A stretch of 63,333 nucleotides of DNA, filler included, from Octopus bimaculoides (lineage: Eukaryota): NCBI RefSeq assembly GCF_001194135.2. It is 5 parts of 5 records of this genome, joined end to end, with 100 filler letters (N's around TTAATTAATTAA, not from the genome) between each part and the next. Parts side by side here need not be neighbours in the genome. Positions count along the whole stretch, not along the records: positions 27,635 to 45,798 come from NC_068998.1; 4 more parts are not named here. One strand, written 5' to 3'. The number at the start of each line of letters is the position of its first letter. Within the stretch, counting starts at the first letter, position 1. Position numbers and translations under genes: made by a program. Under the pieces are notes generated by a model, which saw nothing but the letters and a program-made list of their open reading frames with translations, ran no database searches and was not told where the DNA came from. This document shows positions 39,370 through 42,057 of the stretch, in pieces.

Positions 39370-42057
39370 TCACGCTTTTGTATGAAATTCATGCACTCCA
39401 TACGTTTCACACTTGTGTAGGAAATGCAGTCACGCCGTAGGTTTCATGCTTGTCTATGAAATTCATGCATTTCATGACTCTGTATGAAATTCAATGATTT
39501 CATACGTTTCACGTTTGTGCATGAAAGTCATGTACTTCATAAGTTTGACTCCTGTGCATGAAATTCTATCACTTCACATGTTAAACGCATGTGTATGAAT
39601 GTTATGTAATTCCTACGTTCCAGGCTTGTGTATGAAAATCAATAACTTCATAGGTTTCATGCTTGTATATGAAATTCCTGCAATTCATGCGATTCATGCT
39701 TGTGTATAACATTCATGCACTTCGTAGGTTAAAAGCTTATTTATGAAATTCATGCATTTCATATGTATCTCTCTTCTGCATTAAATTCCAACTCCTCATA
39801 TGTTAAATGCTTGCGTATGAAATTTTATAAAATCATACGTTTCACGTTACCGTGTGAAATTAATGCATTTCATACGTTTCACGCTTGAGTATGAAATACA
39901 ATTATTCAATACATTTCACGCTACTGTATGAAACTCAATCCATACGTTTCAGACATCTGTATGAAATTCATGCACTACATACGTTTCAGACTTGTGTATA
40001 AAATTCATGCACTTTGTAGGTTTCAGACTTGTGTATGAAAATCATGAAATACGTACCTTTCAGACTTCTTAAAGAAATTCATGCATTTCATACGTTTCAG
40101 ACTTGCATACGAAATTCGTGCGCTTCGTACGTTTCAGACTTCCGTACGAAATTCGTGCACTTCGAACGTTTCAGACTTGCATGCGAAATTCGTGCACTTC
40201 GTGCGTCTCAAATTTGCGTACCAATTCGTGCACTTCGTACGTCTCAAAATTGCATACCAAATTCGTGCACTTCTTACATTTCAAACAAACGTACGAAATT
40301 CATGTACTTCGTACGTTTCAGACATACGTAGGAAATTGGTGCACTTCGTCCGTTTCAGACTTGCGTACAAAATTCCTGCACTTCGTCCGTTTCAGACATG
40401 CGTAATAAATCGTGCACTTCATACGTTTCAGACTTGCGCACGAAATTCGTGCACTTCGTCCGTTTCAGACTTGAATCCGAAATTCGTGCAATTCATACGT
40501 CTTAGACATGCATATCAAATTCATGCACTTCGTACGTTTCAGACTTGCGCACGAAATTCCTGTACTTCATCCGTTTCACACTTGCGTACGAAATTCGTGC
40601 ACTTCGAACGTTTCAGACATGCGTACGAAATTCGTGGACTTCGAACGATTCAGACTTCTGTACGAAATTACTGTACTTCATCCGTTTCAGACTTGCATAC
40701 GAACTTTCTACACTTCATACGTTTCATACATGCGTACGAAATTCGTGCACTTCGTCCGTATCAGATATGCGTAAGAAATTCGTGCACTTCATACGTTTCA
40801 GACTTGCGTACGAAATTCGTGTACTTCATCCGTATCAGACTTGCATACGAACTTCTTGCACTTCGTCTGTTTCAGACTTACGTACGAAAATCCTGCACTT
40901 CGAACGATTCAGAGTTGCGTACCAAATTGCTGTACTTCATCCGTTTCAGACTTGCATACCAACTTTCTGCACTTCATAAGTTTCAGACTGGCGTACGAAA
41001 TTTGTGCACTTCGTCCGTTTCAGACTTGAGTCCGAAATTCGTGCAATTCATACGTCTTAGACATGCGTACGAAATTCGTGCACTTCATACGTTTCAGACT
41101 TGCGTACGAAATTCGTGCACTTCATACGTTTCAGACTGGCGTACGAAATTTGTGCATTTCGTCCGTTTCAGACTTGAGACCGAAATCCGTAAACTTCATA
41201 CGTTTCAGACATGCGTACGAAATTCGTGCACTTCATATGTTTCAGACATGTATACGAAATTCCTGTACTTCGAAGGATTCAGACTTGCGTACGAAATTCC
41301 TGCACTTCGTCCGTTTCAGACGTGCACAGGAAATTCCTGCAATTCGTCCGTTTCAGACGTGAAAAGGAAATTGCTGCTCTTCGTCCGTTTCAGACATGAA
41401 CAGGAAATTCCTGCTCTTCGTCCGTTTCAGACATGAACGGGAAATTGCTGCTCTTCGTCCGTTTCAGACGTGAACAGGAAATTCCTGCTCTTCGCCCGTT
41501 TCAGACATGAACAGGAAATTCCTGCTCTTCGCCCGTTTCAGACATGAACAGGAAATTCCTGCACTTCGTCCGCTTCAAACATGAACAGGGAATTCCTGCT
41601 CTTCGCCCGTTTCAGACTTGAACAGGAAATTCCTGTTCTTCGTCCGTTTCAGACATGAACAGGAAATTCCTGCACTTCGCCCGTTTCAGACATGAACAGG
41701 AAATTCCTGCACTTCGCCCGTTTCAGACATGAACAGGAAATTCCTGCTCTTCGCCGTTTCAGACATGAACAGGAAATTCCTGCTCTTCGTCCGTTTCAGA
41801 CATGAACAGGAAATTCCTGCACATCGCCCGTTTCAGACATGAACAAGAAATTCCTGATCTTCGCCCGTTTCAGACATGAACAGGAAATTCCTGCTCTTCG
41901 TCCGAATCAGACATGAACAGGAATTTCCTGCACTTCGTCCGTTTCAGACATGAAGAGAAAATTCCTGCACTTCGTCCGTTTCAGACATGAACAGGTAATT
42001 CCTGCATTTCGTCCGTTTCAGACATGAACAGGAAATTCCTGCTCTTCGTCCGTTTCA
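39370..42057. repeat. 37-bp tandem satellite, about 70 units, three sequence zones, runs into a gap
   Basis: Zone 1 TGTATGAAATTCATGCACTTCATACGTTTCACGCTTG-like; zone 2 CGTACGAAATTCGTGCACTTCGTACGTTTCAGACTTG-like; zone 3 GAACAGGAAATTCCTGCTCTTCGTCCGTTTCAGACAT. Confidence 0.97.

What the first reader, a model, noticed from the sequence alone, without database searches (positions are those of the whole stretch)
39370..42057. 37-bp satellite whose central dyad is preserved by compensatory changes across three zones
Seen: the palindrome reads ATGAA-A-TTCAT in zone 1 (about 39370-40090), ACGAA-A-TTCGT in zone 2 (about 40100-41310) and (C)AGGAA-A-TTCCT(G) in zone 3 (41327-42057). Both arms change together, including a C>G/G>C transversion pair. 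Asymmetric intermediates (ACGAAATTCCT at 41254 and 41291) sit immediately before zone 3. Neighbouring palindromes (CGTACG, GTGCAC) are not preserved this way. Inference: either selection for a dimeric-protein site or cruciform/hairpin, or arm-to-arm template-switch repair followed by polarised array expansion.
Basis: partly seen in the sequence, partly recalled or inferred. Interest (0 to 1): 0.75.

Follow-up and report, generated by a model that had tools for sequence, protein, structure and literature searches.

The report
Octopus-type 37-bp satellite, shifting palindrome
This is the edge of a non-coding 37-bp tandem repeat in an octopus-like genome; its short central palindrome differs between three blocks of repeats, mostly through a few ancestral mutations that were then copied many times, not through repeated compensatory evolution.

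Summary
The sequence facts hold. There are 73 units of 37 bp (39366-42057, cut by a 100-N gap) in three blocks whose consensus dyads read ATGAA-A-TTCAT, ACGAA-A-TTCGT and (C)AGGAA-A-TTCCT(G). The covariation lies entirely between blocks. Within blocks no mirrored pair covaries (P=0.91), and 22 of 23 units that depart from their block's state are asymmetric. A non-mirror column pair (13-17) has almost the same mutual information as the dyad pair (17-25). Block 1 is block 2 with four of five CpGs decayed to TG or CA, so its T/A pair is ordinary CpG decay. Block 3 arose in two steps. TTCCT was already in 9 of 33 block-2 units, and C>G on the left arm came later, on the branch leading to block 3. 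Identity rises 0.67, 0.80, 0.91 towards the gap, the usual degenerate array edge. One signal remains: the block-3 lineage gained symmetry (6-bp arms, 8 of 9 mirrored pairs), which neutral simulation gives in 0.1-1% of runs. That is nominal and chosen after seeing the data. It fits arm-to-arm templated mutation or weak selection, and this single array cannot separate them. No related array was found. This is an ordinary satellite with a modest open question.

The parts
39366..42057 (+). 37-bp satellite array: 73 full units plus a 7-base stub, cut off by a scaffold gap
   Evidence: TRF period 37; wrap-around alignment into units; MAFFT alignment A1 with 37 columns
39366..40092 (+). Zone 1, units 1-20. 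Oldest and most degenerate block (mean pairwise identity 0.667). Consensus dyad GTGTATGAA-A-TTCATGCAC. Units 17-20 (39945-40092) are zone-2-type units with decayed CpGs.
40093..41311 (+). Zone 2, units 21-53. CpG-rich block (CpG o/e 2.0, identity 0.801). Consensus dyad GCGTACGAA-A-TTCGTGCAC. Nine units have the asymmetric C at idx25. Internal segmental duplications: units 31-32 match 46-47, 36-37 match 43-44, 33 matches 40 and 45 matches 49.
41312..42057 (+). Zone 3, units 54-73 plus stub. Youngest and most homogeneous block (identity 0.909). Consensus dyad GAACAGGAA-A-TTCCTGCTC. Unit 54 (41312-41348, GCACAGG) is transitional.
41620..41638 (.). The only perfect 19-bp palindrome in the array (unit 62, GAACAGGAAATTCCTGTTC)
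   Evidence: 9 of 9 mirrored pairs; sequence
41254..41301 (+). The two asymmetric ACGAAATTCCT dyads just before zone 3 (41254-41264 and 41291-41301). A third exact copy is at 40551-40561.
42058..42157 (.). 100-N scaffold gap. The inner continuation of the array is unknown, and sequence beyond the gap is unrelated.
39200..39373 (+). Truncated SINE copy that abuts the outer end of the array. Other copies lie at 27660-27895(-), 28363-28574(-), 35200-35331(-), 43296-43420(+) and 43526-43608(+).
   Evidence: blastn within the piece; alignment; the same SINE is found in Octopus vulgaris loci

Best explanation
This is the outer edge of a non-coding 37-bp satellite array in an octopod genome. The three zones are successive amplification and homogenisation waves, old and decayed at the unique flank and young and uniform towards the array interior.

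The apparent compensatory changes in the dyad are inherited founder states, not repeated events.
1. Zone 1 descends from a unit in which the CpGs had deaminated. The two mirrored dyad CpGs went to TG on the left arm and CA on the right arm. That symmetric outcome has a prior of about one half once both sites have decayed.
2. Zone 3 descends from one unit of the common asymmetric ACGAAATTCCT type. It later acquired C>G on the left arm, with T>C two bases away, and was then amplified.

Shown here: zone structure, CpG decay, the two-step order of changes, absence of within-zone covariation, and tolerance of asymmetric units.

Inferred: that amplification rather than selection fixed the symmetric states, and that the array has no unit-level sequence function.
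For: - Zone structure explains the covariation. MI of pair 17-25 is 0.756, but the non-mirror pair 13-17 reaches 0.725. Conditional on zone, pair 17-25 is unremarkable.
- Within-zone shuffles show no excess of complementary cells at any of the 9 mirrored pairs (P=0.45-1.0; all pairs together P=0.91).
- 22 of 23 units that depart from their zone's state are asymmetric.
- 9 of 33 zone-2 units carry C/C at this pair.
- Zone 1 has TG, TG, CA, CA at four of the five zone-2 CpG sites. The flanking DNA has CpG o/e 0.34.
- NJ tree plus Fitch parsimony puts G25>C on a branch subtending 32 units (zone-2 units 33, 36, 40, 43 plus zone 3). C17>G comes later, on the branch of the 20 zone-3 units.
- With CpG hypermutability, neutral simulation gives a complementary double change at 17-25 in 7-11% of runs.
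- Identity gradient 0.667, 0.801, 0.909.
- The hairpin is weak: -3.2 to -4.3 kcal/mol as single-stranded DNA.
Against: - The dyad centred on idx21 is the best dyad of the unit in all three zones (8/9, 7/9, 8/9 pairs). Random 37-mers reach 8/9 in about 1% of shuffles.
- Six of the eight consensus differences between zones 2 and 3 fall in the arms. Even so, symmetry rose (perfect arm 5 to 6 bp; 7/9 to 8/9). Neutral simulation gives 8/9 or better in 0.4-0.9% of runs, or 0.1-0.2% given six hits in the arms.
- The A/T positions of the core are 2-3 times less variable than A/T positions elsewhere in zones 2 and 3 (P about 0.015 each).
- These figures are nominal, were chosen after seeing the data, and rest on one lineage.
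Confidence: 0.55

Rival explanations
1. Templated mutation. The imperfect palindrome was corrected arm-to-arm by short-range template switching during replication or repair (quasipalindrome correction), and the corrected unit was then amplified. Symmetry increases through mutation bias, with no selection.
For: - On the zone-3 lineage, TACGAA became CAGGAA (idx15-20). This is the exact reverse complement of the right arm TTCCTG (idx22-27), so two substitutions 2 bp apart are explained by one event.
- A29>T (12 of 20 zone-3 units) and C28>T (unit 62, a perfect 19-bp palindrome) also copy the opposite arm.
- The directional gain of symmetry has P about 0.001-0.01 under random substitution.
- The mechanism is established and is known to give one-step compensatory changes (abstracts of PMC5453318, PMC8794818 and PMC7202029).
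Against: - C at idx15 occurs alone in zone-2 units 30 and 33, so the two changes need not have been simultaneous.
- Left-arm positions 13-14 (AA) were not converted to the complement of the right arm.
- No other unit shows a clustered arm-copy event.
- There is no within-zone excess of symmetric variants.
- A single C>G at a CpG explains the key change equally well.
Confidence: 0.22
2. Selection for secondary structure. The dyad is kept because hairpin or cruciform (non-B) DNA at each unit is useful to the array, for example as proposed for centromeric satellites. Asymmetric variants are mildly deleterious and are replaced during homogenisation.
For: - The same dyad centre is the best in all three zones.
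- Hairpin energies are similar across zones (-4.3, -3.2, -3.5 kcal/mol), whereas the asymmetric intermediate has -0.3.
- The youngest, most homogenised zone has the longest dyad.
- The core is less variable than other A/T positions.
- Short dyads are reported as a common property of centromeric satellites (PMC5889037).
Against: - There is no compensation within zones.
- 27% of zone-2 units are asymmetric, and only 20-65% of units per zone carry a perfect 11-mer.
- The stems are only 4-5 effective base pairs and AT-rich.
- The effective number of independent switches is two or three, and one of them is CpG decay.
- The chromosomal position of the array is unknown. It lies among SINE, LINE and mariner remnants, not in an evident centromere.
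Confidence: 0.15
3. Binding site of a dimeric DNA-binding protein centred on GAAATTC. The zone-3 core GGAAATTCC resembles a Rel-homodomain-type palindromic site; that resemblance is from my own memory and was not tested.
For: - GAAATTC is the most conserved part of the dyad in all zones (nearly invariant columns).
- The palindromic shape of the site would suit a homodimer.
Against: - A protein that reads position +/-4 would be disturbed by T/A > C/G > G/C. A protein that does not read it gives no reason for the two arms to change together. Binding therefore predicts conservation, not covariation.
- Asymmetric units are common.
- No protein evidence of any kind is available here.
Confidence: 0.05

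Closest known systems
Dyad-containing satellite DNAs (short <10-bp dyad symmetries in centromeric satellites; Kasinathan & Henikoff 2018, PMC5889037)
   Same: Short tandem unit with a <10-bp dyad that is the strongest symmetry in the monomer and persists as the sequence changes.
   Different: No evidence that this array is centromeric. The stems are weak, many units are asymmetric, and persistence is explained by descent from two or three founders.
Array-edge degeneration with a homogenised interior, as in divergent monomeric alpha satellite flanking homogeneous cores (my own knowledge of satellite evolution, not tested here)
   Same: Identity rises stepwise from the unique flank inward (0.67, 0.80, 0.91). 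The blocks are discrete, and local segmental duplications are present.
   Different: Only one edge and 2.7 kb are visible, and the interior is lost in an assembly gap. The unit is 37 bp, and no regular higher-order repeat is seen (lag profile flat).
Quasipalindrome-associated template-switch mutations (PMC5453318, PMC8794818, PMC7202029)
   Same: Nearby substitutions in one arm become the reverse complement of the other arm and lengthen the perfect dyad.
   Different: It cannot be shown that the changes happened together, because single-change intermediates exist. Only part of the arm is converted.
CpG decay of methylated repeats
   Same: The zone-1 consensus differs from zone 2 by CG>TG or CG>CA at four of five CpG sites. 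The flank is CpG-depleted (o/e 0.34).
   Different: The decay states are uniform per site, so they were inherited from a founder and not acquired unit by unit. Zone 2 still has CpG o/e 2.0.

Membership tests
Satellite / tandem-repeat DNA | Head-to-tail units of constant length in a long array | tested here: met
   73 units of 37 bp, TRF score 1905; segmentation
Satellite / tandem-repeat DNA | Non-coding, with no protein or RNA family match | tested here: met
   The 451-aa ORF across zone 2 has no homologues, and its only representative hit is another repeat-derived ORF. There are no Rfam or tRNA hits. The ORF exists only because the zone-2 consensus lacks stop codons in all three + frames.
Structure maintained by compensatory evolution (covariation in the RNA sense) | Several independent double changes, and covariation that survives correction for relatedness | tested here: not met
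   Within-zone shuffles P=0.91. 22 of 23 deviant units are asymmetric. MI of the non-mirror pair 13-17 is close to that of pair 17-25. The tree places the two zone-3 changes on different branches.
Non-B-DNA (dyad-rich) centromeric satellite | <10-bp dyad symmetry enriched over chance | tested here: inconclusive
   A perfect run of 5 or more occurs in 8% of shuffled units, 6 or more in 2%, and 8/9 or better in about 1%. Hairpin z-scores are -1.6 to -3.8.
Non-B-DNA (dyad-rich) centromeric satellite | Centromeric location or CENP-A association | not testable with these tools
   Only an 18-kb scaffold piece is available; the neighbours are SINE, LINE and mariner remnants.
Quasipalindrome template-switch mutation | A cluster of substitutions equal to the reverse complement of the other arm | tested here: inconclusive
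   idx15-20 CAGGAA equals the reverse complement of idx22-27 TTCCTG in zone 3. However, C15 alone is present in units 30 and 33, and idx13-14 are not converted.
CpG decay | Changes are CG>TG or CG>CA, other CpGs of the same units are also affected, and the genome context is CpG-depleted | tested here: met
   Zone 1 has TG 13, TG 15, CA 12 and CA 14 of 20 units at four sites. Flank o/e is 0.34.
SINE-derived satellite | Monomer significantly similar to part of the adjoining SINE | tested here: not met
   Local alignment scores of five SINE tails against zone trimers lie within the shuffle null. The single P=0.018 came from my own CpG-restored consensus and does not survive the number of tests.
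Palindromic site of a dimeric transcription factor | Conserved half-site contact bases and demonstrated binding | tested here: inconclusive
   The core GAAATTC is conserved, but position +/-4 differs in each zone. Binding is not testable here.

The most novel reading that the evidence does not exclude
The dyad of this satellite is actively kept symmetric, either by arm-to-arm templated correction or by selection for an extrudable hairpin. Each new homogenisation wave would then start from a unit whose two arms match again. That would make this a natural case of compensatory evolution in satellite DNA, visible as successive complementary pairs (T/A, C/G, G/C, plus the outer pairs 15-27 and 13-29) along one array.
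Probability: 0.3. Interest if true: 0.55.

Novelty: new member of a known kind. Interest (0 to 1): 0.25.

Why it matters
If dyad symmetry in satellites were shown to be restored again and again, it would support the view that DNA shape, and not sequence, is what satellite arrays conserve. It would also give a tractable non-model example. As the data stand, this array mainly shows how block-wise amplification of a few founder units, together with CpG decay, can mimic compensatory evolution. That is a useful caution when covariation is read from tandem repeats. The satellite itself appears undescribed in the literature I could search: no octopus satDNA paper was found.

Tried and rejected
1. SINE origin of the monomer. 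The array starts inside a truncated SINE, and by eye the SINE tail (GACGAAAT...GCATTTCGCCCG...CGATTC) resembles the unit. Local alignments of five SINE copies against each zone were no better than shuffles, so this was rejected.

2. Related arrays by DNA pattern (CGTTTCAGACWTGNNNNNGAAATTC).
- Metagenome contigs gave 24 single matches. Eighteen of them lie in one dispersed repeat family from one set of JGI samples, with unrelated flanks and no tandem structure. The number of independent matches is about what chance gives.
- Bacterial and archaeal genomes gave 2 chance matches.
- Viral contigs gave none.

3. Related arrays through repeat-derived ORFs.
- The word-indexed protein search found nothing.
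- The exhaustive representative search found one 37-aa-periodic protein (E=6e-4).
- Its DNA (L027 3672-4026) is a 37-bp array sharing 23 of 37 positions with ours (pairwise P about 1e-4 to 4e-3), and it has no dyad (ATGAA-A-CTCTG).
- That array grows out of the tail of an unrelated dispersed element, and it was the best hit out of 1.8 billion proteins. I treat the similarity as probable chance, not as a family member.

4. Two Octopus vulgaris loci (69 kb) contain the SINE but not the satellite.

5. Small inversion of the core as the source of the zone-3 arm. This would turn the centre A into T, which is not observed (it occurs only in unit 70).

6. Heat-shock-element-like GAAnnTTC. The spacing is wrong, because the dyad is GAA-A-TTC.

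7. A literature search for the SINE sequence string found nothing.

Full report
**What is there.** Only 27635-45798 of the window is real sequence.
- TRF finds a 37-bp tandem array from about 39380 to 42057.
- A wrap-around alignment to the unit CGTTTCAGACTTGCGTACGAAATTCGTGCACTTCGTA (idx0-36) cuts it into 73 full units, 39366-42050, plus a 7-base stub. The array then meets a 100-N scaffold gap. MAFFT gives the same 37-column register (A1).
- Beyond the gap the sequence is unrelated. We therefore see one edge of an array whose interior was not assembled.
- The array has no Rfam or tRNA match.
- The 451-aa ORF over zone 2 exists only because the zone-2 consensus has no stop codon in any + frame. 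It has no homologues.

**Organism and surroundings.**
- The piece carries mariner-type and LINE remnants and at least six copies of one SINE.
- A LINE fragment matches hypothetical proteins of Octopus vulgaris at 66-69% identity.
- The SINE is found at 72-81% identity in two O. vulgaris loci fetched for comparison. The source is therefore an octopod or a close relative.
- The satellite is absent from those 69 kb.
- The flank of the array is strongly CpG-depleted (o/e 0.34), more than the two O. vulgaris loci (0.71 and 0.87).

**The observation.** The dyad is centred on idx21, with mirrored pairs 20-22, 19-23, 18-24, 17-25 and 16-26, and further out 15-27, 14-28, 13-29 and 12-30.
- Pair 17-25 reads T/A in 13 of 20 units of zone 1 (units 1-20, 39366-40092).
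- It reads C/G in 18 of 33 units of zone 2 (units 21-53, 40093-41311).
- It reads G/C in 19 of 20 units of zone 3 (units 54-73, 41312-42050).

- Perfect 11-mers are a minority or a bare majority: 4/20, 10/33 and 13/20 units.
- The asymmetric right arm (C at idx25) is spread through zone 2 in 9 of 33 units, starting at unit 28 (40351).
- The dyad is really a 19-bp imperfect palindrome, with 8/9, 7/9 and 8/9 complementary pairs in the three consensus units. It is the best dyad of the unit in each zone.

**Is it compensatory evolution?** Raw statistics look strong. Pair 17-25 has the highest mutual information of all 666 column pairs (0.756), and no column shuffle reaches the observed covariation (0 of 500). 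The signal, however, lies in the zone structure.
- The non-mirror pair 13-17 has MI 0.725, because column 13 also has one state per zone (T, C, A).
- When the 3' letters are shuffled only within zones, none of the nine mirrored pairs shows an excess of complementary cells (P=0.45 to 1.0; all together P=0.91).
- Of the 23 units that depart from their zone's state at 17/25, 22 are asymmetric. The exception is unit 32, a double CpG decay.
- Units are also not independent within zones. Zone 2 contains segmental duplicates at lags of 4, 7 and 15 units.

The effective sample is therefore two transitions between zones.

**Transition 1 (zones 1 and 2).**
- The zone-1 consensus equals zone 2 with CG>TG at idx13-14 and idx17-18, and CG>CA at idx24-25 and idx33-34. 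Only the CpG at idx0-1 partly survives.
- Units 17-20 are zone-2-type units (CAGAC) with these decays, so they link the two zones.
- The T/A pair is thus part of a general CpG decay in a CpG-depleted genomic context.
- Each CpG can go to TG or CA. Two of the four combinations at the mirrored sites keep the palindrome, so the prior for a symmetric outcome is about one half. This is inference from the known chemistry of 5-methylcytosine deamination.
- The states are uniform per site, so they were inherited from a founder unit and not acquired unit by unit.

**Transition 2 (zones 2 and 3).**
- The consensus units differ at idx10, 13, 14, 15, 17, 25, 29 and 36.
- A at idx10, A at idx14, C at idx25 and C at idx36 were already common in zone 2 (10, 9, 9 and 12 of 33 units).
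- An NJ tree built without the two columns, with Fitch parsimony, puts G25>C on a branch subtending 32 units (zone-2 units 33, 36, 40, 43 and all of zone 3). C17>G comes later, on the branch of the 20 zone-3 units.
- The tree is weakly resolved (35 columns), but the order agrees with the raw counts.
- The asymmetric dyad therefore existed for some time and was tolerated. One C>G at a CpG then restored symmetry in the founder of zone 3.
- In neutral simulation (eight random substitutions on the zone-2 consensus) a complementary double change at 17-25 occurs in 1.4% of runs. With CpG sites weighted 5-10 times it occurs in 7-11%.

**What is left over.** The zone-3 lineage did more than restore one pair.
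- T15>C made 15-27 complementary.
- A29>T (12 of 20 units) made 13-29 complementary after C13>A.
- One unit (62, 41620-41638) is a perfect 19-bp palindrome through C28>T.
- Six of the eight consensus differences fall in the arms, yet the count of complementary pairs rose from 7/9 to 8/9 and the perfect arm from 5 to 6 bp.
- Random substitution gives 8/9 or better in 0.4-0.9% of runs, or 0.1-0.2% when six hits are forced into the arms.
- The A/T positions of the core are also 2-3 times less variable than other A/T positions in zones 2 and 3 (P about 0.015 each), but not in zone 1.
- These figures are nominal. The arm length and the lineage were chosen after seeing the data, the finding was itself picked out by eye, and T15>C is a transition that repairs a T.G mismatch, which is the easiest kind of gain.
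- I read this as a suggestive residue, not as a demonstration.

**Mechanism.** I weight four readings.
- Neutral founder effects plus CpG decay plus block-wise amplification (0.55). The identity gradient 0.667, 0.801, 0.909 towards the interior is the familiar degenerate array edge.
- Arm-to-arm templated mutation (0.22). It fits the fact that idx15-20 CAGGAA is the exact reverse complement of idx22-27 TTCCTG. It is also a documented source of one-step compensatory changes (abstracts). However, C15 occurs alone in units 30 and 33, and idx13-14 were not converted.
- Selection for a hairpin or cruciform (0.15). It fits the similar hairpin energies of the three zones (-4.3, -3.2, -3.5 kcal/mol) against -0.3 for the asymmetric variant, and the literature on dyads in centromeric satellites. 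It conflicts with the 27% asymmetric units in zone 2 and with the lack of any within-zone compensation.
- A dimeric protein site (0.05). This predicts conserved contact bases, not covariation.

**Searches for relatives.**
- DNA pattern scans of metagenome, prokaryotic genome and viral collections gave only single, chance-level matches.
- An exhaustive protein search with the array ORF found one other 37-periodic ORF. Its DNA is a 37-bp array in an ENA metagenome contig (L027 3672-4026). It shares 23 of 37 positions with our unit and has no dyad.
- That array derives from the tail of an unrelated dispersed element, and it was the best hit out of 1.8 billion proteins. The similarity is therefore probably chance.

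**Caveat on the assembly.** Zone 3 contains four identical units, and the contig ends in it. Copy number and order in zone 3 may therefore be collapsed, which does not affect the consensus states.

**Verdict.** This is a real but ordinary satellite edge.
- The three symmetric dyads are real at the consensus level.
- The claim of preservation by compensatory change comes down to one CpG-decay founder and one two-step restoration.
- There is a modest unexplained tendency towards more symmetry in the youngest block.

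Noticed in passing
window 44115-44459: A second tandem repeat: about 10 copies of a 35-bp unit (AAAAGATTATTGCTTTGACCCTGTTTGGAAAGAGC), nearly identical to each other and interrupted by an 18-N gap at 44219-44236.
   Followed up: no
window 27660-27895(-), 28363-28574(-), 35200-35331(-), 39200-39373(+), 43296-43420(+), 43526-43608(+): At least six copies of one SINE family whose 3' end is an (ATA)n-type tail. The same family is present in Octopus vulgaris loci (L029) at 72-81% identity. 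The copy at 39200 is truncated exactly where the satellite begins.
   Followed up: partly
window 40081-41436 (+): A 451-aa ORF runs through zone 2, because the zone-2 consensus has no stop codon in any of the three + frames. It reads all three frames in turn (37-aa period) and would be called as a gene by a naive predictor.
   Followed up: yes
window 27635-39360 and 42158-45798, compared with L029 and L030: CpG o/e of the DNA flanking the array is 0.34. Two Octopus vulgaris loci fetched for comparison have 0.87 and 0.71. This locus may lie in a germline-methylated domain such as a gene body.
   Followed up: no
window 40461-40534 vs 41016-41089; 40646-40719 vs 40905-40978; 40979-41015 vs 41127-41163: Segmental duplications of one or two units inside zone 2, at lags of 15, 7 and 4 units (unit identities 0.86-0.97). 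There is no regular higher-order repeat.
   Followed up: partly
window 29311-30127 (+), 33919-35055 (-), 42576-42869 (+), 45615-45798 (+): Remnants of a mariner-type transposase (weak Pfam Transposase_1 hit) and LINE-like ORF fragments. One is interrupted by the N run at 34150-34415, and one is cut by the end of the piece.
   Followed up: partly
L001-L024 (JGI contigs Ga0056108, Ga0056133-135, Ga0209259): One dispersed repeat family in one group of metagenome samples carries CGTTTCAGAC[AT]TGCAT..GAAATTCGCAC, a 25-30-nt look-alike of the satellite unit, once per contig and within conserved unrelated flanks. It is probably host DNA of an animal, and the match is probably chance.
   Followed up: partly
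L027 3672-4026: A 37-bp tandem array (9.6 copies, TTTCAGATTGTGGTATGAAACTCTGGGTCTCATTCTG) in an ENA metagenome contig from a CpG-depleted eukaryote. It grows out of the 3' end of a dispersed element whose translation (VPLVEFMYLVFTRMPGESY...) recurs in many contigs. L027 also holds 47-bp, 25-bp and 19-bp arrays.
   Followed up: partly
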